From Schmidtea nova (taxonomy: Eukaryota), in assembly GCA_044892505.1 (NCBI GenBank), contig CM097884.1, forward strand, positions 68,696,001 through 68,760,000: DNA of 64,000 nt, given 5' to 3'. The translations under genes were made by a program, and so were the position numbers. The notes under the pieces are model-generated. The model saw only the letters and a program-made list of their open reading frames with translations. It had not been told where the DNA came from and ran no database searches. Within the stretch, counting starts at the first letter, position 1; each line of letters starts with the position of its first letter. Shown piece by piece: positions 17,861 to 60,208 of this stretch.

Positions 17861-18250
17861 TCAACCAACAAAGTAAACAGTTTCGAATATGCACTCTTTT
17901 CTGACATTTTAAAAATTCATAATGTATCTGTATAGCTCAACTGCTAACGGTAAACTGAAAATAATATTAAAAGAAACCCTCCTTTATTTGATACAAAGAC
18001 ACCATTAAGAATATTTGTTAACACAGTTGGTGAAAAAATATACCACAGCCTACGTAAAAATGCGATATTACTTGTGCATTTTTTAATTTTTTTCTTTAAC
18101 ACTTTACGGAGGGGTGATGGGTAGGTTTTCTACTTTTAATTCATTTATTCTTTAATAACGAAGACAAAAATAAAAATTTAACAAAAAACATACTTACCAG
18201 AAATTGATTTATTATTTTAATTCTCTGTAAAAATATATATGAAAATATTA

Positions 18251-18436
18251 TATTATTATCAATAATTCTCATAATGATGACTATAGATCAAAATTTTTTT
18301 TATAAACAATAACACAATATTTCGGCACAGCCTTTATCAAGTGTGTATTGATAAAGGCTGTGCCGAAATATTGTGTTATTGTTTATAAAAAAAATTTGAT
18401 CTATAGTCATCATTATGAGAATTATTGATAATAATA
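18251..18436. repeat. Near-perfect palindrome, ~89-bp arms, 7-nt loop (GTGTGTA)
   Basis: Arms 18251-18340 and 18348-18436 are reverse complements except for one A-run length difference. Confidence 0.95.
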
Positions 18437-18599
18437 ATAAAAAAAGATCAAAGGTGAAAAAAGATAATTATGAAAATAGTATAGTTAATACTTGAATGAT
18501 TAAATGTATTGAATCAGTTATAATTATATTAATAGTTTTTATTTTTTATTTAGTAAGTAAATACATTAGATTACAAATAAGAAACAATAAAATGAGAAA

Positions 18600-20340: not shown

Positions 20341-20505
20341 ATTCTATGTAATGATTTCATGTTTTAGGATTGTTAGAAGCAATTAAATTCAACTCTTCTT
20401 CCATAATATTTATTAAATTTTTATCACAATTTCAAAATGTCCCCGTTTAATTCTGAATATTAAAACACTGAGGCATTTGTAATTCTAATATTAATGAGGA
20501 TATTG

Positions 20506-20508
<3 letters not shown>

Positions 20509-20589
<81 letters not shown>
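20509..20589. repeat. (TA)n microsatellite; others at 24335-24416 and 25434-25506
   Basis: Uninterrupted TA runs of ~70-80 nt. Confidence 0.98.
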
Positions 20590-20593
<4 letters not shown>

Positions 20594-22636
20594 TATTAAT
20601 ATAAAATATCTAAAATGTTACTCGTTAAATTAATTAATTAAATTATTTTTAATTTAAAAGGAGTTTTGGAAATCCTTACATCCCCCTTCTTTAAAATGTT
20701 TAATCCTTTCATTATATTTCTGACTATAGTCTTCCCATTCTTGTCTTCTAATAAGTAACTTCTTTCATGAATTTGTTCGTGGTCTTTATTTCGAATTTCC
20801 TTTTTTACTAACACTTTCTCCAATTTCTAATTCTCTTTTTGTTTTGACTTCCTCTTCCTGTCTTTTGTCTTCTAATCTCTGCGTAATGTCTTCTCTATTA
20901 ATTTTATTATTAACATGCCATTGTAATCTATTAATCTTTCTTCCAAAAATAATTTCAGCTGGGCTAACTGCAGTAGTTTTCTGAGCTGTCGCATTTAAAG
21001 TGTATTCTATATCAGGTAATAATTCTGCCCAATTTTTCTTCATTCCATCATTTAATGATGTGTTAATATAATCTCTAATAGTTCGAAACGGTCTTTCAAC
21101 TAAACCATTGGTATTATGGTGATACGGACTTGAAAATATTAACTCTATACCTGCTGTTTTTGCCAGTTCTTTAATGATATTTGCTTCGAAATTCTTTCCA
21201 CAATCTACATGTAATTCTTTAGGTGCCCCAAATTTAAGTATCCATTTATGTAACAAAACTTTTCTTATTGTTTTTTCATCCTGTTAAATAATAGCAGTTA
21301 GTGAAATATATTTACTGTAATGATCAATTATAGCACAAATATATTTATCTCCCTTTAATGTTTCTCTTAAAGGTTCACAGATGTCCATGTATATTTTTTC
21401 AAAAGGTTCAGAAGCTTGAATGACTTTGGTTTCTTCTTTAGACTTTTTGGTCATAACTTTGTTTTTCTGGCATGATTCACATGTAGAGATAGTCACCTTA
21501 ATTTCTTTTGCCATGTTAACATATCAAAATTGTTCTGAATGTATTTCATTACTTTTTCTAACCCTGCATGACATAATAGCAAATGTGTTTTCTTTATCAT
21601 TTCTCGTCTTTTAATTTCTGGTATCCATATTTTGTCTTTATTTGTATAGACTATATTATTTTTTAAATAAAATTTATCCTTTTCATTTCTATTAATTCTA
21701 TCTTTTATATTTTGTATCTCTGCATTATCCTTTTGCCATTCATCTCCGTTATTTTCTGTCATCAAAGTTAAAAACCTAGTTTTTAATTTTCCTGATTTTG
21801 GATTTTCATGTTCCATTGCACATTGTACACATTTCCCACAGATATTTCTAGAAAGCATATCTGCATTAGTATGCGCAGTACCTTTTCTGAACTCAATTTT
21901 TATGTCCAAACTACTTAAATAATTTATCCATGTTTGGAATTGTGCTGTGATTGGCTTTTTTGTCGTTAACATAAAAGTAATCGCTTTATGGTCAGTGCGT
22001 AAGACAAATCATTTACCAAATAAATAATGATTGAAATGACGACAAAAATAGTAAATAGCCAAAATGGTAAAATGCAATACCCTCTTTCGTGTGATTCCAT
22101 TGCATGTGATCCATATGCTACAACATGCTCGTACCCCCATTCATCAGTTTGCGATAAAACGGCCCTAATCGTATCAAAACTTGCGTCTGTATCTAATATA
22201 AATTCCTTCCTGAAATCTGGGAATACAAGAACCGGTGCAGTTGTTAATGCTATTTTCATTTCTCCAAAGGCTTTTTCACATTCCTCAGTCCAAATCATTT
22301 TTTCATTGCTATTTCCACATATACTTTCTAAGGTTCTTGATTTCTTTGCATAATCCTTAATAAATCTGCGATAGTTATTACATATACCCAAAAAACTCCT
22401 CAAATTTTTTATACATTTTGGTTTTTGAAATGACTGGATCGCTTCAATTTTACTTTTGTCTGTACTTATTCCTTGGCTGTTTATAACGTGACCTAAGAAT
22501 TTAACTTCATTTTTTAATAACTGACACTTTTCAGGATTAATTTTTAATTTTGCCTCCAATATTTTCTCTAACACTCTTTTGAAAGTCTTGTAGTGTTCCT
22601 CTACCGTTTTTATAAAAATCGAAATATCATCTAAAT

Positions 22637-22998
22637 CAGAGGTTCCCAAACTTCTTTGGCTCTGGACCCACTTGGAAATATTTTTGACATCTCGGGACCC
22701 ACTGAATAAAATTAAGCATCGAGTACTCAGTAATATCTCATAAATTGGGTTAAAATATTCCGATTTACAGACAGCGTTTAGAAACTTTAGAAATTAGCAC
22801 ATTTAAAACATAAAAATGAAACTTAGGAAAACAGTAAAAAATTTATTCCAATGCAAAAGCAACAGTTTTAACAGTGTTATAACAGTTTAACTAATATTTA
22901 TACTGTCAAGTTTATGTTTTCCTAAAAACTTTCGCAACCCACTTGCCAGAGCTTGGCGACCCACTTTTGGGTCGCGACCCACAGTTTGGGAACCTCTG
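22637..22998. mobile_element. hAT (Buster-type) MITE, 362 bp
   Basis: TIR CAGAGGTTCCCAAAC at both ends. 8-bp TSD ATCTAAAT at 22629-22636 and 22999-23006, with central TA. Confidence 0.95.
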
Positions 22999-24331
22999 AT
23001 CTAAATACACAATTACCCCTTCTTTATTTAGATCTTTTAATACTTTTGTCATTAATTCTTGAAATGTACCTGGCGCAGTTGCAATGCCAAATGGTATTCG
23101 ATTAAAACAAAATTGGCCTTCTTTAGTAGAAAAAGCTGTCTTTTCTTGAGATTCAATATCCAATCTTACTTGATAATAAGTGTTCCCGAGATCTATAGAA
23201 CTAAAGTATTTAGATCCATGTAGTGTATCTAATATTTCGTCAAAGTTCGGCATTGGAAACGCTTGTCTTTCGGTAATTTTATTCAGTTGCCTAAAGTCTA
23301 AACAAAGTCTAATATCTTTTTCTCTTTTTTCCACACGCATACTAAAGGTGTATTCCAAGGCGAGTTACATTTCCTTATGATATCATTATCTTCTAATTTT
23401 TTTATTGCATTATTTATTTTCTCCTTTAAATTGATAGGCTGTCTTCTCGGCTTTATCATTATTGGTTCACCTTTTGTAATAATTTTATGTTCAATTAAAT
23501 TCGTACATCCAATATCCCACTTATCTGTCATAAAAACATTTATATTTTTCTTTACAATTTCTAACAGTTTATTATTCTCGTATAATTTTAAAGTTTCTAT
23601 TGTTTTCTGTAATCTTTCAGTATTTGTAATATTTCTTCCAAATTTCGCTTCTATTTCACATATAAAGTCATTCGATCTTTCACATCTACTCTCTATATAT
23701 CTTAATTCTATTCCAAACTGTTTCTGCAATTCCACTCCTCCAATTATATCTGGGACAACGTTTGTAACTACAATAAATATTACTTTTCTTGCTATATTAC
23801 CAATTCTAACATCAATTTGTATCTTTCCTACTGTTTCCAGTTTGCTATCATTTGCACATCTTAATTTATCGTTTGTCCTTATTATTTCAACATTTTCTAA
23901 TTTATCCACAACTGCTTTAGTCATAACATTAACTCTAGCTCCCGTATCTAACAAACATTCCATTTTATGGTTCTGAATTTCAAGAGTTGTACTCGGTCTA
24001 CCTTGCATTTTATTATATGTCAATCGTGGCTCTTCCCATTCTTCGTCAGTGAATATATTTTGCTTCTCCTTAAAATTTGAATTAGCCATTATTTCATTCA
24101 TCCATATTTTATAATTTCTCTCTGTATTCTCTAATTTTTTAAAAAACTTTTAAACTTTTTCTGCTATTATTTCATTACTACATTCTGTTTATTTAAAATT
24201 ATTATCTTTTTGATTTTCAAAATTTTTAATATTATTATTTAATAAAGTCTGGTCAGCATTAAAAAAATTACTAAAATTACATACATTACTACTTTTAAAA
24301 TTACATATTTTATTAGATAAAGGTTTTATAC

Positions 24332-24418
<87 letters not shown>

Positions 24419-24750
24419 AATTATTTACATCATTATTAAAACTATGGCCAATATCTGCACTAATATCAAAATTACCTAATAAATTGCTCCGATCATTGCC
24501 TCCCGTGTCGAAGCGTGTCCTTTTGGGTGCTGGGTGTCATCACATTTGTCCTCAGAATCATGCGAATAGTCCATTTGCATCATTTCATCATTAGCTTCAA
24601 TAGCTGCTACGGATTTTCACTGGTGTTGATTCCTCTGTTGATATCTCATTGATTGATTTGGATAGTAATTGTTTTAGTGGTTTTGTCGCTGACTTTTGTT
24701 CGACTTTGTTTTATACTTACCTGGCGCGGAGAGAAATTTTCGCTTCTCCT

Positions 24751-24804
24751 GCAAACACTGATGAGAGCCAAAAGCTCGAAACTAGTCTGCTATTGGGGAT
24801 TTGC
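24751..24804 (+). ncRNA. Minimal type I hammerhead ribozyme, copy 1 (stem I partly disrupted)
   Basis: CTGATGA-GAGC-CAAAA-GCTC-GAAAC-TA-GTC. Predicted cleavage after 24787. The 5' strand of stem I reads AAACA instead of ATAGCA. Confidence 0.8.
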
Positions 24805-25135
24805 ACTGGGTATCACAAAAAAAATCACAAGCTTTTTTTTTGTTTAAAACAAATAAGTCATCCGACAAATGTTTTTTTCAAAAGATATTTCAAGAAATTG
24901 AAATAATGAAGCTAAGGCAGTCGGGTGCGCTTGCAAACAGTTTCTGTTGAACACTTTTAGTGCGCAGAGGTGAAAATGAAATTCATACGCCATGTTTGCA
25001 AGTTACAGATTATCTGTAGGACCTTGCATATTCAAGTGATGTTTTATCCAGTGTACCAGGTATAGTATATAACAAAAATCTTTCGACTTTGTTTTATACT
25101 TACCTGGCGCGGAGAGAAATTTTCGCGTCTCCTGC

Positions 25136-25177
25136 ATAGCACTGATGAGAGCCAAAAGCTCGAAACTAGTCTGCTAT
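25136..25177 (+). ncRNA. Minimal type I hammerhead ribozyme, copy 2 (intact)
   Basis: ATAGCA-CTGATGA-GAGC-CAAAA-GCTC-GAAAC-TA-GTC-TGCTAT: 6-bp stem I, full catalytic core, 4-bp stem II and palindromic mini stem III (ACTAGT). Predicted GUC cleavage after 25171. Confidence 0.92.
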
Positions 25178-25317
25178 TGGGGATTTGCACTGGGTATCAC
25201 AAAAAAAATCACAAGCTTTTTTTTTGTTTGATATATATATATAAATATAAATAAATATATATAAATATATATATATATATTATCATAATTATCTTTTTTC
25301 ACCTTTGATCTTTTTTT

Positions 25318-25429
25318 ATTATTATTATCAATAATTCTCATAATGACTATAGATCAAAATTTTTTTTTATAAACAATTGTTTATAAAAAAAAATTTTGAT
25401 CTATAGTCATTATGAGAATTATTGATAAT

Positions 25430-25435
<6 letters not shown>
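25318..25435. repeat. Perfect 118-bp spacerless palindrome, same family as 18251-18436
   Basis: 59-bp arms meeting at AAACAA|TTGTTT. Shares the flank AAAAAAGATCAAAGGTGAAAAAAGATAATTATGA (inverted) with the 18.4-kb copy. Confidence 0.95.
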
Positions 25436-25514
<79 letters not shown>

Positions 25515-26329
25515 TTAATATAAAATATCTAAAATGTTACTCGTTAAATTAATTAATTAAATTATTTTTAATTTAAAAGGAGTTTTGGAACTCCTTACAA
25601 GGATATTCGTCTTTCCCACGTCTTTCCCACATCTCATTTATGTATCATATACATACTACTGTATTTTATAGCCAATTTATTAATTACTTAATGTTCAGAT
25701 TTTCTTTTCGTTATTTTATTCTCATCTGTAATGACAAATTTCTTTGCATGCCCAGAATCTAAATGTCTTTGATTCTCCTTTATAGTCTTCATAATCTGAA
25801 TTTCTTCCTCTTTGTGTGTAATTGAATTTTCGATTATCTGGTCTTCCGTTTTGATAGGGTCATCTATTTATCGAGTTTGGCCTACTCTGAATATTTCGAT
25901 TATTATCTTTTTTATTTTTTCAAATTGGTTTTCCATGTTGGTTGCGTGTAGGGTTATATCTAGGATTAAGTTTGGCTTTTATATTCTCTTCATGGACAAA
26001 ATACAATAACAGTTCCTCGCGTATGTACCCACGATCATTTCTGATGATCGCATTGGTAATGTACCTAGCGGCCTGCGAACGCATATAGGCAGGTGAGCTG
26101 CATTGCTGCGACTGCTCCTAACTTCTAATTCGGGTTCACTAATGTCAATAAAAGACCTTAAGTTTTCTAATTAAGCCCCTCTGGTGACAAATATTTGCTA
26201 AACGATTTCTCATCTTAGTATATCACCTTAGCTTCACAAATACACTAATTTTATTTACAAATCAAAGAATCAAGATAACAAAATTATACACTAACACATT
26301 TATTTCACTGTACAACGCGACATTTACAA

Positions 26330-29712: not shown

Positions 29713-32562
29713 TAAATACAATACTGAAAATACAAAAAAATACCACAACACATAATCATATTACAAGAACCTTTTGATGGTAGCATAAATAAATTACAAA
29801 CGTTTCTGAAGGAATTCGAAGTATACATTACGATATCTCGTTGGATCTTGTCGAATAGAGCAATACGAGAAGGAATGTCATTATACTTGATAGAAAGCGC
29901 ACAAGCGACGAAAAAGTGGAAAGCTGAAAACGTGAACAGAGATTAAAGAATTCTTTGAGAAAATATTTCGAATAACAAAAGAAGAGAATCAGAAAAGTTT
30001 TGATGTCTTTCATCGAAAACAGCAATTTAACAAGTCAAACGCAATGTTCGTATGTGAAATCACGTGAACTCAGGAGATATGATATACGTGCGAATATCGT
30101 ATGTCAAGCACCAAAACTAGTGGAAGAAGCTTTAACAATAGTAAACCGATGTGAAATGTGTTTGAAACCGCCGTTGACAGTGACAGTTTTATCAGCAGAA
30201 AGAACACCAACAACAACAACCGTGGATAGTAATGCGAATAAGAATAATCAACAAGGAAGTGTGACAATAAACCAGTTCATGCAGAAATCACAACAAATGT
30301 TCAGGACACTACAAATGAGGAATACGAGTAGAAATGTTGAAAATCGTAATGAAAAGCAACAATTTCAGAAACAGCAATGAGTATAATAATAAAATATGCA
30401 ACATCTTTCAGAAAATGGGGCATCTAAGTAGGGGACGCTATCGAGAGAAAACTTGTCAAATTTGTAGTAGAAAGACCACATTGAGAGAATATGTTGAACG
30501 AATATCATTGAAACAATTACGAATGCGGAAAATTATTTCACGAGAAACAACGACATAAGAAGTATTTATGTAATAAATAATAACTGTTTTAATTGTAAAC
30601 AACCTGGACACATTGCGAGAAAATAACCAATAGAAAAATGCCAAATCCACTGAAAAGTAATGAAATATCAACACAAAAATAACAAATAAATGTTATATAA
30701 AAACTCTAAAGATTTAGATAAATGATAGACAGAAGGTCATCAAATAACCAACATAAAGGAATCAATACGTTACAAAATCTTGAACCTGGGAAGTCGGTAA
30801 AGAATGAAAAGCAAATGAAACAACAAGTCGAATGGCAAAGACTCCAAAGGGAAGAACCACAAGAAATTCCACAAAGATGAAAAAGTCGAGAAAATTATAC
30901 CAGGACAATTAACATGATAAGAATAAGAAATGAGAACACTGAAAGAAATCAAGCCGCTGAAAGAGAATAAAAAAGAATATCCTTGAAAAGATAAAAGAAG
31001 AAATAATCCGAAAGATGAATATTAAAGTCGTGGAAATAGAGGGAGGAGTAAATGTGGTATGTAAAACCATGAACAAAGGAGAAAAGAAAGAATTTGTACA
31101 AAAGTACGTATGTCCAAAGGAAAGATTAAGAAGACAAAACAAAGATACGGATTATATGGATGAACAGTTCGAATAAGCCGTGATGAGCAAAAAAGAAGAG
31201 TTAGGCCGAAGATTAGTATTAATCATTAAAAATGAAGTGAAAAAATGAATCAAACAGTAAAAAAGCCGAAGAAAGAAGAAAGAAAATCTTCAAGATTGTT
31301 GTGAAAAATCGAACACAACAAGGAATATTGTCATTTGCCGAATAGATTTCACTGGTAATTTGTTGGAAATCACTTCGAAACGAGGTAACATTTTCATAAC
31401 TACAGTTGAAAGAGGAATTGTTCCAAATATAAGAGGATATTCACGATTTATTACATTGTACACTTAAATGTCACCCAAAACGGTCCGCACCCTCAAAGTG
31501 ACACCAATGTCCTAAATATATAAATTTTTTGAATTCGTATCAAATTGAAATTTTTTGTGAGAAAATTTTATTCTCCATTCCCGTTCTCCTTAAAATTTAA
31601 AAACTATATATTCATTAAAATAATATAAAATAAATTTAAAACAAACATTTTATTTGAAAACATCCCTTTAGCCTAGGTTTTCATGCATCATTTGCAATCC
31701 TTGCATTGTCTTAGTATTTTGGGGTTATAAATAAATGTACAAAATTAAAAAGAAATAGAAAATATGCAAAATTAATTTTAAATTAATTAAAATTTCAAAA
31801 AGGGTAAAAATCACTATTTTTTGAGGGGGAAAGTGGCAATTGGTGGCAAAAAAAGTTGAAAATTAATGAAGTAATTTTAAATTAATTCGGAGTCCTTGGC
31901 AGGGGCTAGAGGTAAAATGAAAATTATTTAATTAATTGATCTCATTAATCATCAGGGTAATCTCATCAATCATTGTGGAAAGGAGGTAAAGTGGCAGATC
32001 TGACAAGCCGGAAAACTATTTATCAGAGCGCCACTAACAAAGAAAATTTTAAATTTTAAAATTAGTGTGAAGAGTTGGATTTCATGCTTCTGCAGAGTGA
32101 TTGATGGGATTGAGAGTGGTATATAAACCAATTCATCTCAATAAAATTACCAATTGGTCTGAGGAGAAATATTTAAAAATATTTTGAGTAAGAAATTTAA
32201 GAATTTTAGAAAATTAAGGAGAATCGTCAGTGATTAAAAATGAATATCGTCTCTATGAGATTTCATGGGTGACGTCCTTCGGATAGTTTAGCCAAAGCAA
32301 AAATCGAAGTGTATAAACGTTTTGGAAATGTGTTCTTAATAAATAAACTTTTTCTTGTTGGATTTCATTGATTTTCAAAGAACACAAGGAGTCAGAATAA
32401 AATTTAGTCCTACCGAAACTATATTAGCACAACATTATTAATCGGGATATTTTATAAGTTTGACTTGAATGAAAGCCAAATAAATACCACAGCAAACATT
32501 TATCAATTATTCAATCAGAAATATAAAAATCCTCCATGAATGTAAATGATTAATTTTCCCAA

Positions 32563-34958
32563 TTACCGGAAATAGTTATTCAAACTTTTGATCAATTTCC
32601 ACAAAAATCCTTTTTTCTTTTTAGTTTTTGTTGACAATTTATTCGGATTGAAAGATTCATGAAAAGTTTGATCTTCCAATTTCGATGTTGAATTGTATTT
32701 CTTTTCCGAATCATTTATTTCTTTCGGCGTTTCTTCGGTAATTTGCAATGAATTCTGTTTCAATGTTTCATTGTTGCAATCGCCGTCATGTTGCAGCTCA
32801 TAATAATCCATGTATTGGTAAACTTCATCGAAAAGATTTGTCCATTGTCCTTTTTTAATTAATTCCAGATCTTCGCCGCCATTTAGTTCTGAAAGTAAAT
32901 CAATATTTCCCGTGACACTAGAATTTCCCGATTTGATATTATCCATGAAACTGAGGAGGCATCGATTTTCGGAACAACTTTCTTTGTGATTGGCTGAATT
33001 CTGAACTTCGTTTTCCTCTAAGGTTTTAATCGATTCATCTGATGAATATTGTGAACTGGCGCTGGGTTCGGAAGTGCGATTTCCTTTCATAACATATTGA
33101 TCACAAACAAGTGCTTTCGTTGATTTCTTACTAGATACGCTGTTATCACTGTGATACCATGAGTCATCTGTGTTTTGATCGCTCAACTGATTTCTCTCAT
33201 CGCACTCATTGGATGAAGTTTCTGAAGCAATCGGAGATTGCATTTCATTGGTGAAAATTTCATTCTCTTTTTCTGCACTTAAAACAAAATTATGTCTTTT
33301 TGGAATTGGTGGTTTTTCCGATGAATATTCAGATTCCTAAATAAAAAACAAAAAAAATCATTAAAATATCCAATTAAAAAGTTTTCATATTCTTAATTTT
33401 TTTGTATGTTTCAATATTGCTCCCAATTCTCTCAGGCTACCAGTTAATATTGTGTTTCATATTTAGCACGAATTAAGGTAGTCTCACAAAAAGAAAAGTA
33501 TTCGATAAAAAATTGAATATATCAATAGTGAAAAATTAAGATTTTACTTACATTTATCATTTGTTTAGTTGGAGTGATATTTATATTGTAGGTTTTCTTG
33601 TGAAGCATTCTAATAAAATGGGAACAATCAATGGAATATTAATAAAAACAATATTTGATTACCGATATGCATATTCGTTCCGTTTGAACAGTTCTATTAG
33701 AAATCCATTATCATATGTTCGCAACATTGTGGATTGTTTCTTTCCGATCTTGTCCGAATATAAAATTGTGAGATTTCCCAGCATTTCATAGCAATTGATG
33801 TAACTTTTCCATGAAAACGCTTCTGGATTCGGGTGATAGACTGTTATTCCTTTCGGAGATATTCCAATGAAAATATCTTGCGATTTCAGTGACTAAAAAT
33901 AAAATTGAAAATTAGAGAAAAAATTTGAAAATTTTCCCTACTTTTGCATGATATCGTTCTTCTCCGTATCCCGGATAGTTGAGTGCTTTATCAATAAATA
34001 AAAGATCGGCTTGCAAAAATGTCAATGATCTTAAAAGAAAAATTAATTTGATAAATAAAACTGAAATAATATCCCAATAAAATAAATTCTTACTGTATTT
34101 GTTTATATTCATGAATAAATTCATTTCTTGTTTCTTTCTTATTCATTATTTCCGGGCAAATTAAATTATCCCTACCAAAATGTATCGATTTGAATTGCTC
34201 GCGATCATAACTGCCGTATTGTGAAAAGAATAAAATTGCCGATAATTTTATTGATTCATTGATAGAGCATTTTATTCTAAAATAGATTTATTATTATTAT
34301 TATTATTATTATTTATTGATTGAACTCACTTTTGATTTCGAATGTCATTCTTAAGTTGTTCGATCAAATAATAGATTGTCATGTAATCTTCCACATAGAT
34401 TAAATTGGAGGGATAATATTGAAACATGAAAATAAATACAATATTGTTTACTCCTTCTAGAAATAGGTGAAAATTATAATAATTAATCAAAAGCCTTTTT
34501 CTAGATGACACTTACTCATTGCTTTGACGATATTTTCATCGGGTTTGAGCCAACGCTAAAAATAATGTTTTAAATATTACTTATAAATTATTGATAAAAA
34601 TTCTAACTTTATTTCCATGTAATTTAGACAGGTATTGCAAGCCAAAAAAGTTTTTCTCTACGATGTTTAAATCTTGACAGATTTTTGATACCAAATTCGA
34701 TCCGGTGTAATTTCTCTGGATAATAAATAATTAATAATATATAAAACAATAATAAAAATAACATACATCGAATTCGTATCGGGTTACAATTTCGTTGAAT
34801 ATTCTTACTTCACATTCGTATTTTTTGGATTTTTTGGTGTTTGCTGTTTGATTAAAATTGTCATTGATTATTCGACGATTTTCATTGGCCAGCGATTTAT
34901 ACATATTAAATCTTGAATTATCGACTAAACTGTAGTAGTAGGTATTTGAATATTCCAT
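32563..34958 (-). CDS. FERM (band 4.1) domain gene, copy A (inverted)
   Basis: Reverse complement of copies B and C with the same exons and splice sites. Homology spans ~31958-35191. Confidence 0.9.
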
Positions 34959-35310
34959 TTGTATTATATTTGTAAAAATGAATTTTTAAATATTTTCTCA
35001 TCTTTTCTAGATAAGTATTACTCAATAAGATGAATAAATTTGAAATAAAAATATTTGTATTTCCTCATTTTAAAAAACAGAAAATATTTCCGCAAAAAAT
35101 AAACATTTATATATATATATATATATAAACGAGCCTAGACTTTCAAATTTTTTAATATGCTTCTATTTACTAAGTTATGTCATTCACAAACTCGTTAGTG
35201 AGTACTTGATTTGTTTGGAAACTGATTGGGAGCTATTATTCTGCTGGTTCGAACCCGAAATATTCCTGACATTACTGCCTACAGAAATTGGATCCAGTAT
35301 GTGCCAACTT

Positions 35311-38300
35311 ATTTTCTAGCGGGATAGTTGTTATTCTCGGAATTAAAACTTTTATTATAAAAATTATGTCGAAAATATTATAAATGAAATAAATATATTA
35401 ATTTATTTTAAAAAATTGATTGTTAAAATTTGAAAATGTCTAACACTAAGAGTTTGATTATTTTTACTTTTATTTGTTCTTTCGTTTAATTATTCAAAGT
35501 CATTCTTAAAAAGATTCTAGGGCTGTAACCTATTTTAAAAGTAGTCTTGGATTATTGTGCTCCCAAGTTGTTGGTATGTAAAATATACCATTTCACTGGT
35601 ATCAATATCGAGGAGTTGTTTGAAATGCACTACGATATGGTGCTTTGGGCTGGAGTCAAATGAGTCGAAAACTGCATTCTAGCACCAATGGATGTTCTTG
35701 CTGTCATGATTTTAAACGACAGCAATCGGTTCATCTTTGGTAGCTGAAATGAGAAAGTCACACTATTCTGATATTTACAATACCAAATACATTAATTTGC
35801 GGAAGAATATCAAGATGATGCCGAAGAAGATTTGATTTAAATCAAAATTTACTTTAAAATTTCGTGGTTTTTATTGATGTTTCTTTTTGTTAATATTTTT
35901 GTGAATTTTCATTGACGCTTGGTAATTTTGAGAGTCATTCGTGTTTATTTATTGTCTTGTTGTTTGTCAATCCTTTTTATGATTTTTTTGTGTATTGATC
36001 TTTTTTATAGAATTTTTATAAGTTGGAATTTGTTTTTGCAGATCAGTTATTTATGTGATTTGTAAAATTTCTATTGTTTTGCAAAAACTTTAGAAAAATT
36101 AATAAATTTCAAAGATTTTTAAAAAGGTTTTAAAATTGAAATAAATATATATAATTTTTATTTTATGTCACTGGTTATGCAATGAAAATATTATATAATT
36201 GAGTACTTAATTATAAAATATTATATAATTCTGAAATATTGCGTTAATTTTGTAACCTCCTAGAAATATAGGGAGACTAATTGTAATTGATAGAGTTTAT
36301 GGATAAATGACTTGTACCAGAGTGTTCACTTCTCCCTACTGATCAAATCAATAATAAATTCTAGTGTTCTTTTTTTCAGTGTAGTCATCATGCTAAAACA
36401 TGAGGAAATTTAGCAGGTGGCGTTTTTTTGCGGAATGATAAAATTGCCAAAATTTTAACAGTATACGTTGATCCAATATTCAAAAACCAAAATTAGAACA
36501 TATTGTTATGGTTTGCATGAACAGGCACGAAATAAAATAAAACTTACAAAAATATACGCAAAAAATATAAAAGCCTGTAAATTTAAAAAATAATATTAAA
36601 ATACAAAAATTAATTAGAAATTTGAAAATTTTGAAAGTAAAGATTTAGCGGGGAAACTAGTATAGGAGGATGAGACGAATTAAAATACGGTAAGATGAAA
36701 TTAAAAAGGGCCCCGAAAAAATAGGAAAAAACAAATTAATTAAAGGAATTAATTATTCAATGGAAAACCCGAGTGATGTGAGGAACCCTAGCCATCAGCA
36801 AATATATCTAATTATCAAGAAAATCAGATGAGTAGAGGGAGTTCGGGCGAACAATCACAAACCCAATTACTCCAAACTAATTGGAAATCCCGCAGTAAAA
36901 AAGGAAGTCACTATAAAAACCCAGACAAATGGCTCAAATCGCCAATTGGTCGAAGCATGAAAATTTAATTCCAAAATTAGCTATAGTTTTCAAAGAGAAG
37001 TTTTAAAGTTAAAAAAGGTTAGAATTTGTGTCGAATCAATTTTTGCGTACCAGAAAAGAATCTCCAACATGAAGACCTACCCCTAACGCAAGAACAGTGT
37101 AGAAAATTCTGTTTTTGTAATTTTGAAGCCAAATTTGAAAATAAAAATTTTTGTGTTGGGTTTTGGTTAATTCGTTTATACAGAAAGGACACAGGGAGTC
37201 AGACAGTAATCGACTATTAAATAATAACCCAACAATATTTACTAATGTAAAGTTTTTGTTTCAAAAATTAAATTTTATTTATGTTAACTTTATTTCTTAG
37301 ACTTTTTATAGCCAAAATAGTGAGAAACTTATCCCAGGATGAATAATGTAAAAATTAATTCAGTTTGTGAATAATATAACTTGGTAAATAGAAGCATATT
37401 AAAAATTATGAAAGCCTAAATGTTTATTTTTTGCGGAAATATTTTCTGTTTTTTAAAATGAGGAAATACAAATATTTTTATTTCAAATTTATTCATCTTA
37501 TTGAGTAATAATTATCTAGAAATGATGAGAAAATATTTAAAAATTCATTTTTACAAATATAATACAAATGGAATATTCAAATACCTACTACTACAGTTTA
37601 GTCGATAATTCAAGATTTAATATGTATAAATCGCTGGCCAATGAAAATCGTCGAATAATCAATGACAATTTTAATCAAACAGCAAACACCAAAAAATCCA
37701 AAAAATACGAATGTGAAGTAAGAATATTCAACGAAATTGTAACCCGATACGAATTCGATGTATGTTATTTTTATTATTGTTTTATATATTATTAATTATT
37801 TATTATCCAGAGAAATTACACCGGATCGAATTTGGTATCAAAAATCTGTCAAGATTTAAACATCGTAGAGAAAAACTTTTTTGGCTTGCAATACCTGTCT
37901 AAATTACATGGAAATAAAGTTAGAATTTTTATCAATAATTTATAAGTAATATTTAAAACATTATTTTTAGCGTTGGCTCAAACCCGATGAAAATATCGTC
38001 AAAGCAATGAGTAAGTGTCATCTAGAAAAAGGCTTTTGATTAATTATTATAATTTTCACCTATTTCTAGAAGGAGTAAACAATATTGTATTTATTTTCAT
38101 GTTTCAATATTATCCCTCCAATTTAATCTATGTGGAAGATTACATGACAATCTATTATTTGATCGAACAACTTAAGAATGACATTCGAAATCAAAAGTGA
38201 GTTCAATCAATAAATAATAATAATAATAATAATAATAAATCTATTTTAGAATAAAATGCTCTATCAATGAATCAATAAAATTATCGGCAATTTTATTCTT

Positions 38301-40350
38301 TTCACAATACGGCAGTTATGATCGCGAGCAATTCAAATCGATACATTTTGGTAGGGATAATTTAATTTGCCCGGAAATAATGAATAAGAAAGAAACAAGA
38401 AATGAATTTATTCATGAATATAAACAAATACAGTAAGAATTTATTTTATTGGGATATTATTTCAGTTTTATTTATCAAATTAATTTTTCTTTTAAGATCA
38501 TTGACATTTTTGCAAGCCGATCTTTTATTTATTGATAAAGCACTCAACTATCCGGGATACGGAGAAGAACGATATCATGCAAAAGTAGGGAAAATTTTCA
38601 AATTTTTTCTCTAATTTTCAATTTTATTTTTAGTCACTGAAATCGCAAGATATTTTCATTGGAATATCTCCGAAAGGAATAACAGTCTATCACCCGAATC
38701 CAGAAGCGTTTTCATGGAAAAGTTACATCAATTGCTATGAAATGCTGGGAAATCTCACAATTTTATATTCGGACAAGATCGGAAAGAAACAATCCACAAT
38801 GTTGCGAACATATGATAATGGATTTCTAATAGAACTGTTCAAACGGAACGAATATGCATATCGGTAATCAAATATTGATTTTATTAATATTCCATTGATT
38901 GTTCCCATTTTATTAGAATGCTTCACAAGAAAACCTACAATATAAATATCACTCCAACTAAACAAATGATAAATGTAAGTAAAATCTTAATTTTTCACTA
39001 TTGATATATTCAATTTTTTATCGAATACTTTTCTTTTTGTGAGACTACCTTAATTCGTGCTAAATATGAAACACAATATTAACTGGTAGCCTGAGAGAAT
39101 TGGGAGCAATATTGAAACATACAAAAAAATTAAGAATATGAAAACTTTTTAATTGGATATTTTAATGATTTTTTTGTTTTTTATTTAGGAATCTGAATAT
39201 TCATCGGAAAAACCACCAATTCCAAAAAGACATAATTTTGTTTTAAGTGCAGAAAAAGAGAATGAAATTTTCACCAATGAAATGCAATCTCCGATTGCTT
39301 CAGAAACTTCATCCAATGAGTGCGATGAGAGAAATCAGTTGAGCGATCAAAACACAGATGACTCATGGTATCACAGTGATAACAGCGTATCTAGTAAGAA
39401 ATCAACGAAAGCACTTGTTTGTGATCAATATGTTATGAAAGGAAATCGCACTTCCGAACCCAGCGCCAGTTCACAATATTCATCAGATGAATCGATTAAA
39501 ACCTTAGAGGAAAACGAAGTTCAGAATTCAGCCAATCACAAAGAAAGTTGTTCCGAAAATCGATGCCTCCTCAGTTTCATGGATAATATCAAATCGGGAA
39601 ATTCTAGTGTCACGGGAAATATTGATTTACTTTCAGAACTAAATGGCGGCGAAGATCTGGAATTAATTAAAAAAGGACAATGGACAAATCTTTTCGATGA
39701 AGTTTACCGATACATGGATTATTATGAGCTGCAACATGACGGCGATTGCAACAATGAAACATTGAAACAGAATTCATTGCAAATTACCGAAGAAACGCCG
39801 AAAGAAATAAATGATTCGGAAAAGAAATACAATTCAACATCGAAATTGGAAGATCAAACTTTTCATGAATCTTTCAATCCGAATAAATTGTCAACAAAAA
39901 CTAAAAAGAAAAAAGGATTTTTGTGGAAATTGATCAAAAGTTTGAATAACTATTTCCGATAATTGGGAAAATTAATCATTTACATTCATGGAGGATTTTT
40001 ATATTTCTGATTGAATAATTGATAAATGTTTGCTGTGGTATTTATTTGGCTTTCATTCAAGTCAAATTTATAAAATATCCCGATTAATAATGTTGTGCTA
40101 ATATAGTTTCGGTAGGACTAAATTTTATTCTGACTCCTTGTGTTCTTTGAAAATCAATGAAATCCAACAAAAAAAATGTTTATTTATTAAGAACACATTT
40201 CCACAACGTTAATACACTTCGATTTTTGCTTTGGCTAAACTATCCGAAGGACGTCACCCATGAAATCTGATAGAGATGATATTCATTTTTAATCACTGAC
40301 GATTCTCCTTAATTTTCTAAAATTCTTAAATTTCTTACTCAAAATATTTT
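35311..40350 (+). repeat. 5.0-kb segment duplicated directly at 52013-57106
   Basis: Both copies start ATTTTCTAGCGGGATAG and end CTTACTCAAAATATTTT. Near identical apart from a 12-bp minisatellite expansion at ~53560-53630. Confidence 0.95.
37568..39962 (+). CDS. FERM (band 4.1) domain gene, copy B; 9 exons, 599 aa
   Basis: Exons 37568-37759, 37811-37918, 37971-38010, 38070-38196, 38250-38432, 38497-38584, 38634-38863, 38917-38974 and 39189-39962 join via GT-AG introns into an 1800-nt open frame. FERM motifs: ICQDLNIVEKNFFGLQY, RWLKP, FQYYP, YYLIEQLKNDI, YGSYD, QADLLFIDKA..YG, DIFIGISPKGITVY..FSW. Acidic/Ser-rich tail. Confidence 0.92.
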
Positions 40351-41424
40351 TGTTGAGGTTCCAAGAATCTCAACTTGATGAACTTATATAAATAAATAAG
40401 TCAAAGACTGGTTCTTTTCTAAACTTTATTTAAATTATAACAATTTACAATTTTGATAAAAATTAAACAATTACCTCACAAAATATATGTATCAATTTCA
40501 ACATATATTTTATATATGTATAGATGCGTGTGTGTGTGTGAATATTTGCAGCTTCCTGAGCTCGGATGTGTAAATAGGTATGCTCAAATTATGTTGTAAT
40601 ATCAATTTATTGAATTTACAACTCTTCTTTAAAGCTTTTGATTTTTGGGTGATTTAACTGAAAAATCAGTCAGTTTATATACTAAATTTTAAGGCACTTA
40701 ATCTGTCAATAATGATTGTTATTTTGCCTCTTGAGTTGATTGAAATTGTTTTTGAAAATAGAGTTGTTTTCAAAACAGAATTGTTTTCAAAATTATTTTT
40801 TAACCTTGAGATATTATTTCATTTTTCTGACCTTGTAGGTCAGAAATATAATTTATTTAAACAAACAGTAATTTATTTATTTTTAATTTATTTAAACAAT
40901 CTGTATTATTTATTTATTTATTTTATTATTATTATTATTTATTGAATTAAAATATTAAAATATAAATGAAAATATAATCCATTTTCCAAATAGTTAAAAA
41001 ATTAATTTACATAAAATATTTTCAACACAAAATATTTTTTCAAAATTATATAAAATTTTGTCCATCACCATAAAAATGTCAATAAATGTTCGCAATATCA
41101 CAAATGATAAATTGTCAAATTTTAAATTGTCATGATGATAAATTGTCATTATAAAAATTAATTTTCAACAATATTTTATTAACAGAAACAAAATAAAATT
41201 ATCCCATAAAAATAAAAATTGCCAGATAGTCATCACATAAAATATTATCATATAAAATCACTAAAATCATAATGTCATTGAATTTGATATTTTCCATTGT
41301 CTATCTATTTTAAAAAAATACATCAACAAATAAAATCAATTATTCATATCATCAATTATCAAAACCAATAAAATAAAAGAAAATGTTATCACAATCAAAT
41401 GTAGTTCATCAAGTCAAATTATTA

Positions 41425-43179
41425 TCATTGTTGGCCTGGGTTCTGATTGTTGTTATCCACATACACATTTAGTCTGTACTTATTTGCCCCTATTGTATAA
41501 TTTTCATCTATCTCAAAATTTTCGACTATCTTCCCTGTATCTAACACTACTCCCTGGGGCGTCAAGGTTATGTCCTCATAACCTTTTTCAACATAATATA
41601 TGTGTATTTCATTCCCATCTACAATCACTGTTGTTTTCTTTACATTGCTATTATATGTGACAGTGATTTCTGGCATGGGTTCTTCTATTGTGATTTGAGG
41701 TTCTGGTCCTAATTCATCTTCTTCCATTGGCTCAATTCCTTCTACTTCCAAATTAGAGTTATCTTCATCTATTGTTATGATTTCAAATGTTGGTTTCTTA
41801 TTTCCGTCCGATGTGGAACAATTTTCTTTAATTGTTTTCTTTGTTATTGTTTTCATTCCATTGTCAGCAGCTTTTTCCCATTCGGTTTCTGTGAGTAAAT
41901 ATAGTAAGCGAACTATTAAGCAAGTTTCACCAACATTAAAAGGTTCTGGTTTTAATAATATATTATTAAGTTTTTTGTTTCTCTTCAGATCATTTGTATT
42001 CTTAATAATCTGAAATGCTAAATTTGATAATTTAATCCTGTCTTCCGGGACATTATTGACGAATGTTTTCATATATTCGGTGTTCGAGAGTTCTCTTACT
42101 CCCATAATATCATCCAGGTCTATTGTGACACTTTTCAGTTTTTTCATAATGTCGAAACCTACTATTATTTTTCCATAGAGGTGTTTCTTGATTTCTAACA
42201 ATGCTATGAATTCGTCCATATTGCCTATACTATTTTCTCTGGTAGCCATTGTGATTTCTGGAAAGAATCTTTGTATTTTTTCTCTTGGGGTAATTTTACT
42301 TTGAAATAGTGTGTCTCCTTTGTAGTTTCTAATACAGACATCTACTGGTCTGTACTCTTTATTAAAATCTTGTACCGCTTTTATGTCTACAAAAGTTATT
42401 TTTCCTTGTCTTTCTTCGGGTGTTAGTGTTTGCTTCGTGAAAGGTATTTTCTTTTCTACGAATATGTTATCCATTCTAATGTCTGACCAAATGGGTTCTA
42501 ATTTTTTAAAGGGATTTTCTATTGTGGGTACATATAATATTTCAATTGCAATTACACATGGCATATTGTGTAATTGTATAATGATATTGTTGAATTCTGT
42601 AGACAATTTACGTTCTCTAAGGGTTTTAAATATTATTGATGTATTGTTTGCAGTCGCTAATACTTTATCGTTGTGTTTTAGTGATATTGTTGTTTTGGTA
42701 GTATGAATTACTATTCTATGGGGAATTTTGATGCCTTCTCTTGCATCTCTATCTGCATTTTGACTTTCTTCAAAACTACCTATAATTTCTTTTAATTTAA
42801 ATCTTCTTGATGAGTTGAATTTTACGATGATCATTTCTCTTTCTTCTATATCTACTTTTAATGCATTTGGTATGCATACCTGATTCGGGAATTTCCTTAG
42901 TGTAATTTCTTCATCATCTGTGTGAATGCTATTTTGAATGATCTTATAAAATGCTGTGTGGTGTTTATATGTGGTGCATGTGGATGTGCATGTGGATATT
43001 GTTGAGCTTGACTGATTGTTTGAGGCTGATTGGTTCATTGGTTGGATTGTTGGTTGATCTATTCTAAAAATAAAATATGACATTATATATTTTATATTAA
43101 TGCAGCTGTAGGACCTACCCTTAGATGCAATATAATATATTGTCAGATATGGGTAAATTTTATAAATTATTGGACACAT
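41425..43179 (-). CDS. Element ORF2 (584 aa): beta-rich N-domain, inactive DEDDh exonuclease-like domain (~41900-42405), acidic linker
   Basis: FVDIKAV..PVDVCIRNYKGDTLFQSKITP..EIT..LYGKIIVGFDI..VRELS..KLSNLA..FNVGET follows the REX4/ISG20 pattern, but the catalytic E, D, H and D appear replaced. Confidence 0.75.
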   Translation of the reverse strand: MCPIIYKIYPYLTIYYIASKGRSYSCINIKYIMSYFIFRIDQPTIQPMNQSASNNQSSSTISTCTSTCTTYKHHTAFYKIIQNSIHTDDEEITLRKFPNQVCIPNALKVDIEEREMIIVKFNSSRRFKLKEIIGSFEESQNADRDAREGIKIPHRIVIHTTKTTISLKHNDKVLATANNTSIIFKTLRERKLSTEFNNIIIQLHNMPCVIAIEILYVPTIENPFKKLEPIWSDIRMDNIFVEKKIPFTKQTLTPEERQGKITFVDIKAVQDFNKEYRPVDVCIRNYKGDTLFQSKITPREKIQRFFPEITMATRENSIGNMDEFIALLEIKKHLYGKIIVGFDIMKKLKSVTIDLDDIMGVRELSNTEYMKTFVNNVPEDRIKLSNLAFQIIKNTNDLKRNKKLNNILLKPEPFNVGETCLIVRLLYLLTETEWEKAADNGMKTITKKTIKENCSTSDGNKKPTFEIITIDEDNSNLEVEGIEPMEEDELGPEPQITIEEPMPEITVTYNSNVKKTTVIVDGNEIHIYYVEKGYEDITLTPQGVVLDTGKIVENFEIDENYTIGANKYRLNVYVDNNNQNPGQQ

Positions 43180-56718: not shown

Positions 56719-57319
56719 TTGGGAAAATTAATCATTTACATTCATGGAGGATTTTTATATTTCTGATTGAATAATTGATAAATGTTTGCTGTGGTATTTA
56801 TTTGGCTTTCATTCAAGTCAAACTTATAAAATATCCCGATTAATAATGTTGTGCTAATATAGTTTCGGTAGGAACACATTTTATTCTGACTCCTTGTGTT
56901 CTTTGAAAATCAATGAAATCCAACAAAAAAAATGTTTATTTATTAAGAACACATTTCCACAACGTTAATACACTTCGATTTTTGCTTTGGCTAAACTATC
57001 CGAAGGACGTTACCCATGAAATCTGATAGAGACGATATTCATTTTTAATCACTGACGATTCTCCTTAATTTTCTTAAATTCTTAAATTTCTTACTCAAAA
57101 TATTTTTAAATATTTCTCCTCAGACCAATTGGTAATTTTATTGAGATGAATTGGTTTATATACCACTCTCAATCCCATCAATCACTCTGGAGAAGCATGA
57201 AATCCAACTCTTCACACTAATTTTAAAATTTGAAATTTTCTTTGTTAGTGGCGCTCTGATAAATAGTTTTCCGGCTTGTCAGATCTGCCACTTTACCTCC
57301 TTTCCACAATGATTGGTGA

Positions 57320-58933: not shown

Positions 58934-58935
58934 TA

Positions 58936-60208
58936 CAGGATAAACCAATAAGTTTTGTCCGGTGAAACATGTATAAATTTCAAAACATCAAAAATGTCAA
59001 TCATTAGTGTCAGAGAGATGTTCAAAATATGCACCATTATGAAGGACACATATGCACCATCGATCAACCAAGCGTCCAGAACCACTTGAATTTCATCAAC
59101 TGCGTTGAAATCTCTTCCACGACTCGCAGATTTCAAAGGGGAAAACAAATAAAAATCGGATGGTGCGAGGTCTGGGGAGTAAGGATGATGTGGCTGAACA
59201 GTAAAACCAAAGTCAGTATGTTTTTGCACAGATTTGGCTGCCGTTTGGGGTCGTGCATTGTCGTGGAGATAGTGAATTTGATGAAACCCACCACAAAGAA
59301 GACGGCGTCGCTTTTGTTGTATTGTCGTCAGCAGACGGGACAGCTGTTCGCAGTAAACATCGGCAGTGATTGTAGCACCCTGCGGCAGAATATCCATCAT
59401 AATCACACCTCTACAGTCCCAAAAGACGGACATGAGATGTTTTCTGGGTGAGACCTGCGCCTCTCCACGAACGGTGGTGATAGGTTCCGTCGTTGTTCCA
59501 ATAGATCCAGACTTCGTCCATTGTAATGAGCTGACTGAGGAAGTCATTAGCAGCATATTTGCACAGCAGCTCATTGCATATTTTCTCACGGTTGGCCATT
59601 TGTTGCTCGGACAACTTGTGCGGGACCCAGTGGTTGCACAGGTAACGCATGCCCATTGCAAGCAGATGATTTCGAATTGTCTGCTGACAAACTCCAAGCT
59701 CCACGCTTATTTCCACAGTACTGTTGTGTTCCTCCAAAAGAGCTAGAATTTTGTCGACGATATCAAGAAAGGGCCTCCAACATCGCTCTTTGTCTTCAAC
59801 ATCAAAGTTTCCTTCCTTGAAGTTTGCAACCCAGCGTCGATAAGTGCGCTCATTTGTTGTGTCCTTCCCCAGTGTCAAATTTATTTCATTTCAATCTGGA
59901 AAGGCACTAATACACTTTCCAATTGTAGTAGATTAACTTGCAGATGTCCTCTCGTGCGAAATTCATTTCAAATCGACGTATTCTAATGAAAACAAAAAGT
60001 ATTTCCGTCAAACAAGAAATTTATTAAAAGTGCTTAATCCACATATCAAAGTTAATAGCAATGTTAAAAATTATTAATAATGGATTTTTTTAAATTTTAC
60101 AAATCTACAACATATATAGCATGGCACATAAAGTTGCAGACCTATACACTCATTATAGCATTGGAAAGCTGAGTATGAGCACCGCACAAAACTTATTGGT
60201 TTATCCTG
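58936..60208 (-). mobile_element. Full-length (1273 bp) mariner element with frameshifted DD34D transposase
   Basis: TIR CAGGATAAACCAATAAGTTTTGT(C/G)CGGTG with TA TSD at both ends. Motifs WVPHKL, ITMDEVWI, LHDNARP, HPYSPDLAPSDFYLF split over two frames. Confidence 0.95.

What the first reader, a model, noticed from the sequence alone, without database searches (positions are those of the whole stretch)
24699..25229. Tandem hammerhead ribozymes defining a 384-nt retrozyme-like circular RNA
Two minimal type I hammerheads with full CUGAUGA/GAAA cores, GUC sites and a palindromic mini stem III lie 384 nt apart around a non-coding, self-complementary monomer. This matches the metazoan non-LTR retrozyme / Penelope-associated hammerhead pattern, where minimal motifs are thought to cleave as dimers and yield circRNAs. 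Loop II (CCAAAA) could also pair with TTGG just after stem I (inference). Copy 1 has a weakened stem I, which might be rescued in a dimer.
Basis: partly seen in the sequence, partly recalled or inferred. Interest (0 to 1): 0.82.

Follow-up and report, generated by a model that had tools for sequence, protein, structure and literature searches.

The report
Two-hammerhead retrozyme-like repeat, probably decaying
The two self-cleaving hammerhead RNA motifs are real and sit in a short non-coding repeat built like the known small circular-RNA retroelements (retrozymes) of animals, so this is an ordinary new example, with one unexplained extra: a 13-base match to the start of U1 spliceosomal RNA.

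Summary
Two identical 30-nt hammerhead cores lie at 24758-24787 and 25142-25171 (+), 384 nt apart, where chance predicts none. They sit in two 147/148-nt direct repeats (24699-24845 and 25082-25229, three differences) around a unique 236-nt non-coding interior. The motif has the usual animal type I build: helix I of 6 bp (downstream copy), helix II of 4 bp, and a 2-bp palindromic helix III that needs a partner copy. Both copies score below Rfam's thresholds. The 384-nt monomer is strongly self-paired (z about -7). Twelve hammerheads from metagenome loci with the same helix III show covarying helices I and II, and some sit beside reverse-transcriptase ORFs. The locus therefore fits a 1.4-unit (dimer-type) insertion of a non-LTR retrozyme, or Penelope-type partial tandem, next to (TA)n tracts inside a patchwork of old transposons. 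Not shown: transcription, cleavage, circles, other genomic copies, or a Penelope-like RT (none in the 64 kb). Two of the three differences weaken helix I of the upstream copy, so the locus looks like it is decaying. One feature is unexplained: each repeat carries a 13-mer identical to the Rfam U1 consensus 5' end. New member of a known kind; interest is modest.

The parts
24699..24845 (+). Upstream 147-nt repeat, read as the 5'-truncated copy of the unit (pseudo-LTR-like)
   Evidence: 98% identical to 25082-25229. The sequence to its left is unrelated to the unit.
24751..24794 (+). Hammerhead copy 1. Core, helix II and helix III are intact and helix I is weakened. Predicted cleavage is after 24787.
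   Evidence: HH9 18.9 bits, E 0.13.
24846..25081 (+). Unique 236-nt non-coding interior of the unit
   Evidence: No other copy in the window. Only short ORFs of up to 50 aa. Forms most of the branched fold.
25082..25229 (+). Downstream 148-nt repeat, the end of the full unit
25130..25183 (+). Hammerhead copy 2. Helix I has 6 bp, a 2x2 internal loop and 4 more bp. Helix II has 4 bp with a 5-nt loop. Helix III has 2 bp and is palindromic. Predicted cleavage is after 25171.
   Evidence: Hammerhead_1 27.6 bits, E 4e-5, full model. HH9 24.1 bits. Fold. Helix I duplex -11.2 kcal/mol and helix III self-duplex of 6 bp at -6.2 kcal/mol.
24788..25171 (+). Predicted 384-nt monomer between the two cleavage sites
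   Evidence: z -7.3 linear and -6.6 circular, 36.7% G+C, ends brought together by helix I.
24713..24725 (+). 13-mer identical to positions 1-13 of the Rfam U1 consensus (copy 1). On the minus strand it reads as a consensus splice donor.
25096..25108 (+). The same 13-mer in copy 2. In the predicted fold it pairs with 25056-25069 inside the hairpin 25056-25107.
25108..25127 (+). Hairpin with a GAAA tetraloop between the 13-mer and helix I. One of the three differences weakens it in copy 1.
25199..25227 (+). A8/U9 hairpin and T-run at the end of the repeat (copy 1: 24815-24843)
24335..24416 (.). (TA)41 microsatellite to the left, separated from the repeat by 282 nt of unrelated sequence
25231..25280 (.). 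Imperfect (TA)n tract directly abutting the right end of the element
25274..25453 (.). Neighbour: MITE-like palindrome with a second copy at 18233-18483
20786..24101 (-). Neighbour: degenerate Ty3/gypsy-type pol (protease, RT, RNase H, integrase) split into five ORF pieces, so at least four interruptions (frameshifts and/or stops, not typed)
25409..25599 (-). Neighbour: 95% copy of the right part of a candidate 204-bp LTR (full copy 20477-20680, next to a purine-rich tract). It would place the hammerhead repeat inside the old LTR element.
   Evidence: inference.

Best explanation
This is a small non-autonomous retroelement of the animal non-LTR retrozyme type. Equivalently, it is a non-coding derivative of a Penelope-like element's pseudo-LTR. 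It was inserted as a partial tandem: a 5'-truncated 147-nt copy followed by one full 384-nt unit. Proposed working (inferred from the family, not shown here): a read-through transcript carries both hammerheads. The 2-bp helix III is too weak alone, so the two ACUAGU stretches pair with each other to make a double hammerhead. [quoted passage not shown] A host tRNA ligase would close it into a circle, and an RT supplied in trans would copy it. At this locus two of the three differences between the copies weaken helix I of the upstream copy, so the copy is probably old and at best weakly active.
For: Cores and spacing are far beyond chance. The architecture matches the canonical metazoan type I hammerhead described in PMC4209133: helix I 6 bp, helix II 4 bp, helix III 1-2 bp with a small palindromic loop. 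Hammerhead_1 matches end to end at E 4e-5. Twelve metagenome hammerheads sharing this helix III have helices I and II that covary: 78.7% of cells are paired against 59.8% when shuffled and about 30% when slid. In L002, L007 and L013 the motif lies beside a long RT ORF on the same strand, as published for Penelope-like elements. The unit length, non-coding content, 36.7% G+C and strongly self-paired monomer match the retrozyme description in PMC7229834. A partial tandem with a truncated upstream copy and a (TA)n neighbourhood matches Penelope-type insertions (PMC8557442).
Against: Only 1.38 units are present, with no other copy in the 64 kb. No copy of this family was found in the metagenome, viral or prokaryote-genome scans or through pseudo-ORF look-ups. 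No Penelope-type RT lies in the window. No target-site duplication could be defined. Both copies score below Rfam gathering thresholds. Helix I of the upstream copy is weakened. There are no expression data.
Confidence: 0.6

Rival explanations
1. It is the remnant of an autonomous Penelope-like element that lost its RT-endonuclease ORF by internal deletion, leaving two pseudo-LTRs around 236 nt. It would be a dead relic, not a member of a retrozyme family that spreads as small circles.
For: The layout of repeat, interior and repeat is that of a pseudo-LTR pair, and hammerheads lie in the pseudo-LTRs of such elements (PMC4209133, PMC8557442). Only one locus was seen.
Against: The 236-nt interior has no trace of an RT and takes part in a very stable fold, which a random deletion remnant need not have. 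A 2026 preprint (10.64898/2026.07.22.740005) argues that retrozymes are themselves such derivatives, so the two readings differ mainly in copy number.
Confidence: 0.22
2. It is a chimeric element with a U1 snRNA-derived module. The repeat would begin with the promoter-proximal part of a U1 gene (5' end plus first hairpin) fused to a hammerhead, and would be transcribed like an snRNA gene.
For: The 13 of 13 match to the Rfam U1 consensus 5' end is kept in both copies. A hairpin follows at the position of U1 stem-loop I, and a U-rich stretch aligns to the Sm site. Exact copies occur nowhere else in the window.
Against: The whole-U1 score is only 7-8 bits, E 6-10, and the four-way junction is not conserved. 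No U1 gene lies in the window for comparison. Comparator hammerhead loci lack the 13-mer next to the ribozyme.
Confidence: 0.08
3. The repeat belongs to the leader of the neighbouring degenerate LTR retroelement on the minus strand. There the 13-mer reads as a strong splice donor, and the plus-strand hammerheads are incidental or the result of a local DNA duplication.
For: The locus lies between a candidate LTR fragment (25409-25599) and the pol remnant. The minus strand carries a consensus donor in each repeat.
Against: A complete hammerhead with matched helices is not expected by accident. The hammerhead is antisense to the pol remnant. The other LTR-type element in the window has nothing similar.
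Confidence: 0.05
4. It is a chance resemblance with no ribozyme.
For: Scores are below Rfam gathering thresholds.
Against: Chance predicts 0.01 loose matches per window and 0 shuffles gave two. All core bases and all three helices are in place in copy 2.
Confidence: 0.01

Closest known systems
Metazoan non-LTR retrozymes (Cervera and de la Pena 2020, PMC7229834; 10.64898/2026.07.22.740005)
   Same: Type I hammerhead. Repeat unit within 150-450 bp (mussel units are 350-390 bp). Non-coding, G+C below 50%, no LTR, PBS or PPT. Highly self-paired monomer whose fold leaves the hammerhead free to form. Dimer-type loci are common, and most families reach at most seven units.
   Different: Only 1.38 units are seen, and the family copy number, expression and circles are unknown. 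The unit carries a U1-5'-end-like 13-mer, which I did not find mentioned in the hammerhead and Penelope papers returned by a full-text search.
Hammerheads in the pseudo-LTRs of Penelope-like elements (PMC4209133, PMC8557442)
   Same: Direct repeats each holding a hammerhead with a very short palindromic helix III that is thought to act as a dimer. Partial-tandem insertion with a truncated upstream copy. Microsatellite neighbourhood.
   Different: No RT-endonuclease ORF lies between the repeats or elsewhere in the window. Helix III is present (2 bp), unlike the strict min-HHR. Helices I and II have the canonical 6 and 4 bp.
Amphibian satellite 2 and axolotl retrozymes (Forster 1988, as cited in PMC4209133; PMC7229834)
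   Same: Units of about 330-350 nt. The hammerhead is weak as a monomer and efficient in dimeric constructs.
   Different: Those form very large arrays and their RNA has been shown experimentally; here there is a single short locus with no RNA data. That newt satellite 2 uses an snRNA-type promoter is my recollection, not verified here.
Plant LTR retrozymes (PMC4918200)
   Same: Two direct repeats, each with a hammerhead, flank a non-coding centre. The circular RNA life cycle is the same idea.
   Different: Plant elements have type III hammerheads, repeats of about 350 nt, a PBS, a PPT and 4-bp target duplications. Here the hammerhead is type I, the repeats are 148 nt, no PBS or PPT is present, and the flanking 4-mers differ.
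Rfam Hammerhead_1 (RF00163) and Hammerhead_HH9 (RF02275)
   Same: End-to-end alignment to both models, with the core, helix II and the loop II CCAAA-type sequence conserved.
   Different: Scores stay below the gathering thresholds because helix III is cut down to 2 bp with no loop.

Membership tests
Hammerhead ribozyme, type I | Conserved core: CUGAUGA, GAAA, and a cleavage triplet ending in a base other than G | tested here: met
   Both copies carry the full core and a GUC site.
Hammerhead ribozyme, type I | Three helices with helix I open and helices II and III closed | tested here: met
   Copy 2 has helix I of 6 bp plus 4 outer bp, helix II of 4 bp and helix III of 2 bp. In copy 1 helix I is largely lost.
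Hammerhead ribozyme, type I | Reaches Rfam's curated gathering score | tested here: not met
   Hammerhead_1 27.6 bits against 34. HH9 24.1 and 18.9 bits against 52. No hits at gathering level.
Hammerhead ribozyme, type I | Self-cleavage at the predicted site | not testable with these tools
   No RNA data or assay is available.
Metazoan non-LTR retrozyme | Type I hammerhead inside a head-to-tail repeat of 150-450 bp | tested here: met
   Period of 384 bp with two hammerheads, but only 1.38 units.
Metazoan non-LTR retrozyme | Non-coding; no LTR, PBS or PPT; G+C below 50% | tested here: met
   Only short ORFs. No TGG-type primer site after copy 1 and no purine tract before copy 2, by reading. 36.7% G+C.
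Metazoan non-LTR retrozyme | Monomer predicted to fold into a stable, highly self-paired structure | tested here: met
   z -7.3 linear and -6.6 circular, 71% of bases paired.
Metazoan non-LTR retrozyme | Many copies in the genome, as monomers, dimers and arrays | not testable with these tools
   The source genome is not available. There is no further copy in the window or in the collections scanned.
Metazoan non-LTR retrozyme | Expressed as linear and circular RNA of unit length | not testable with these tools
   No transcript data.
Metazoan non-LTR retrozyme | Co-occurs with autonomous Penelope-like elements in the same genome | tested here: inconclusive
   None in these 64 kb. The rest of the genome was not seen.
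Penelope-like element (autonomous) | Pseudo-LTRs flank an ORF for a telomerase-like RT, usually with a GIY-YIG endonuclease | tested here: not met
   The interior is 236 nt without an ORF. tblastn with three hammerhead-linked RTs finds nothing in the window.
Plant-type LTR retrozyme | Type III hammerhead in LTRs, with PBS, PPT and a 4-bp target duplication | tested here: not met
   Type I topology. No PBS or PPT. The flanking 4-mers differ.
U1 spliceosomal RNA (RF00003) | Matches the U1 covariance model, including the four-way junction and the Sm site | tested here: not met
   7.0-7.9 bits against a gathering score of 69.5, E 6-10. Only model positions 1-13 match well.

The most novel reading that the evidence does not exclude
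The U1-5'-end 13-mer kept in both repeats is functional. The retrozyme RNA would then carry a mimic of the U1 snRNA 5' end, held in a hairpin against a 5'-splice-site-like stretch, next to a hammerhead. That would tie this ribozyme element to the splicing machinery, either as a module borrowed from a U1 gene or as a decoy or guide for splice sites. Neither arrangement is reported for hammerhead repeats in the papers I could search.
Probability: 0.1. Interest if true: 0.65.

Novelty: new member of a known kind. Interest (0 to 1): 0.3.

Why it matters
Retrozymes are the second known route to circular RNA in animals and are thought to be parasites of Penelope-like elements. Each new family helps to map their distribution and the sequence limits of dimer-dependent hammerheads. 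This locus adds one more example and a clean natural pair: an intact helix I and a damaged one on an otherwise identical ribozyme. The only feature that could lift it above the ordinary is the U1-like 13-mer paired with a splice-site-like stretch. If that recurs in other copies, it would suggest a link between hammerhead repeats and splicing signals, a link so far noted only for the intron end at helix I in Drosophila virilis Penelope (PMC4209133).

Tried and rejected
- **Rfam at gathering level on the whole window:** no hits.
- **Search for more copies, all empty for this family:** window self-comparison; a covariance model of the motif run over the window with filters off; pattern scans of metagenome, viral and prokaryote-genome collections; a word search with the 85-aa pseudo-ORF across copy 1; exact look-ups of three window ORFs. 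I could not identify the source organism.
- **U1 gene or SL RNA reading:** rejected as membership. U1 scores 7-8 bits and no SL family was hit on either strand.
- **Intron in the repeat** (donor-like site near 25059, acceptor-like AG at 25138 overlapping helix I): the donor is weak, and the comparator loci show no consistent donor. Kept only as a lead.
- **Thermodynamic folding of two hammerhead segments together:** it did not return the double-hammerhead pairing. Such programs do not model the core, so this says little.
- **Naming the RT ORFs next to comparator hammerheads as Penelope-like:** this failed. Pfam gives only weak RVT_1 hits with no GIY-YIG, and there are no solved-structure relatives.
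- **Target-site duplication and exact insertion history:** not resolvable. The flanks are (TA)n, a MITE-like palindrome and LTR fragments, one of them inverted.
- **Unintended fetch:** the pattern scan also returned contigs that encode a coat protein of the satellite tobacco necrosis virus type (L001, L015, probably L008). I had not aimed for them. I scanned one ORF against Pfam, used their 43-nt ribozyme stretches in alignment A1 and model R1, and did not pursue them further.

Full report
**What is there.** On the + strand two identical 30-nt stretches at 24758-24787 and 25142-25171 carry the full hammerhead core: CUGAUGA, a 4-bp helix II with a 5-nt loop, GAAA, and a GUC site. A loose hammerhead pattern finds only these two in the 64 kb, against 0.01 expected from dinucleotide shuffles. 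They lie in two direct repeats, 24699-24845 and 25082-25229. The repeats differ by two substitutions and one 1-nt indel, all upstream of the core. Between them is a unique 236-nt stretch. The period is 384 nt, so the locus holds 1.38 units, not an array. No ORF of more than 50 aa lies wholly inside the unit.

**The ribozyme.**
- In the downstream copy helix I has six Watson-Crick pairs, a 2x2 internal loop and four more pairs. Its duplex energy is -11.2 kcal/mol in the expected register.
- Helix III is only A-U and C-G around two bases, so it cannot close on its own. The stretch ACUAGU is a palindrome and can form a 6-bp duplex with a second copy at -6.2 kcal/mol.
- This is the architecture that PMC4209133 gives for most metazoan type I hammerheads, which are thought to act as double hammerheads when a second copy is near.
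- Rfam finds nothing at gathering level. Permissive searches align copy 2 end to end to Hammerhead_1 (27.6 bits, threshold 34, E 4e-5) and to HH9 (24.1 bits). Copy 1 scores 18.9 bits on HH9.
- In copy 1 two of the three differences fall in the 5' strand of helix I. That cuts the helix to two adjacent pairs and one isolated pair, at -4.8 kcal/mol and out of register. The third difference weakens a GAAA-capped hairpin.
- In a double hammerhead each junction joins the core and helix I 5' strand of one copy to the cleavage strand of the other. The upstream site could therefore be cut with the intact strand of copy 2, while the downstream site would depend on the weak monomer form. This is inference.

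**The monomer.** The 384 nt between the predicted cleavage sites fold at -119.9 kcal/mol, against -83.5 +/- 5.0 for shuffles (z -7.3). Folded as a circle they give -115.0 against -80.3 +/- 5.3, with 71% of bases paired and 36.7% G+C. The fold is branched, leaves helices I and II of the hammerhead formed, and brings the two ends together. PMC7229834 reports the same for most animal retrozymes.

**Relatives.**
- No second copy of the repeat, the interior or the left flank exists in the window.
- A metagenome scan for hammerheads with the same helix III gave 16 loci, none related in its flanks.
- In an alignment of 13 distinct motifs (the two window copies plus eleven from the loci), the two helix II pairs left free by the pattern, and helix I, covary. 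78.7% of cells are paired, against 59.8% when shuffled and about 30% when slid. The class is therefore real and the window's motif conforms to it.
- In L002, L007 and L013 the motif lies just up- or downstream of a long RT ORF on the same strand. That is the published layout of Penelope-like elements, but I could not confirm that identity.
- L005 has two motifs 727 nt apart.
- Other loci look phage-like or encode a coat protein of a small satellite-virus type. I did not pursue those.
- Scans of viral and prokaryote collections, a word search with a pseudo-ORF and exact look-ups found nothing.

**Context.**
- The window is AT-rich (about 30% G+C) and full of mobile elements.
- The right end of the repeat abuts an imperfect (TA)n tract and a MITE-like palindrome that has a second copy at 18233-18483.
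- To the left lie 282 nt of unrelated sequence and then (TA)41.
- On the minus strand, 20786-24101 is a degenerate Ty3/gypsy-type pol in five ORF pieces, so it has at least four interruptions.
- A candidate 204-bp LTR at 20477-20680 sits next to a purine-rich tract, and its right part recurs at 25409-25599 at 95% identity. The hammerhead repeat probably lies nested in that old element, on the opposite strand. This is inference, and I could not define a target duplication.
- No Penelope-type RT is present in the window.

**Best reading.** The locus is a dimer-type insertion of an animal non-LTR retrozyme, that is, a non-coding derivative of a Penelope-like pseudo-LTR. Its layout matches Penelope-type partial tandems with a truncated upstream copy (PMC8557442). 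The life cycle is taken from the family (PMC7229834) and nothing of it is shown here: read-through transcription, double-hammerhead cleavage, closure by a host tRNA ligase, and copying by an RT supplied in trans. The weakened upstream helix I, the single locus and the lack of a partner RT nearby suggest an old copy that is at best weakly active. I put this reading at about 0.6. An internally deleted Penelope-like relic is the main rival, at about 0.2.

**Unexplained.** Fourteen bases into each repeat lies a 13-mer (24713-24725 and 25096-25108) identical to positions 1-13 of the Rfam U1 consensus. Exact copies occur only in the two repeats. With up to two mismatches there are four matches in the window, against 0.61 expected. 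The U1 model as a whole scores only 7-8 bits, so this is not a U1 gene. In the fold the 13-mer pairs with a 5'-splice-site-like stretch at 25056-25069. On the minus strand it reads as a consensus donor. An acceptor-like AG overlaps the 5' strand of helix I in copy 2, and an AG lies within seven bases upstream of the core in most comparator families. This recalls the intron end at helix I in D. virilis Penelope (PMC4209133), but the donor is weak. None of the hammerhead and Penelope papers returned by the full-text search mentions U1 snRNA.

**Slips and limits.** The source organism was not identified. I described the large virus-like element elsewhere in the window only from the window itself and fetched no further copies.

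Noticed in passing
window 43274-51925 (-), with 41425-43179 (-): One uninterrupted 2883-aa ORF carries a gag-like zinc knuckle, a weak Bcl-2-like stretch and a Monjiviricetes-type class III fusion glycoprotein (E 1e-87). These come ahead of protease, RT, RNase H and integrase. A 584-aa ORF without a Pfam hit follows. An envelope-type domain placed between gag and pol in one reading frame looks unusual. Envelope-carrying Ty3/gypsy elements of metazoans are described in PMC13524379.
   Followed up: partly
window 31962-40351 and 52013-57320: Direct repeats of about 5 kb (35311-40351 and 52013-57107, over 99% identical) flank the large ORF. They contain inverted copies of a 3-kb segment and three copies of a 226-aa ORF with no Pfam hit.
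   Followed up: no
window 24713-24725 and 25096-25108 (+): A 13-mer identical to the Rfam U1 consensus 5' end sits in each hammerhead repeat. In the predicted fold it pairs with a splice-donor-like stretch at 25056-25069.
   Followed up: partly
window 25274-25453 and 18233-18483: A MITE-like perfect palindrome occurs in two copies, embedded in (TA)n. It gives spurious microRNA-precursor hits below threshold.
   Followed up: partly
window 20477-20680, 25409-25599, 24443-24475: Three pieces of one sequence of about 200 bp with TG..CA ends and a central (AT)n. One is complete and lies next to a purine-rich tract, one is the right part, and one is a short left-end piece in inverted orientation. 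They are probably LTR fragments of the degenerate gypsy-type element, with a rearrangement through the (AT)n.
   Followed up: partly
window 58930-59878 (-): A mariner/Mos1-type transposase remnant in two overlapping ORF pieces.
   Followed up: no
window 61590-61982: A run of 393 N inside a 405-aa mechanical ORF and next to short tandem duplications at 61983-62480.
   Followed up: no
L001, L008, L015; L004, L006, L012, L014: Hammerheads with the same ACUAGU helix III also occur on metagenome contigs that encode a coat protein of the satellite tobacco necrosis virus type, and on phage-like contigs with primase and helicase genes. Their helix I is not formed by the immediate flanks, so their topology probably differs.
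   Followed up: no
L002, L003, L005, L007, L009, L011 and window 25137-25138: In most eukaryote-type comparator families an AG preceded by a pyrimidine-rich run lies 1-7 nt upstream of the CUGAUGA box, at the 5' edge of helix I. It may echo the intron end at helix I reported for D. virilis Penelope. The sample is too small to judge.
   Followed up: partly
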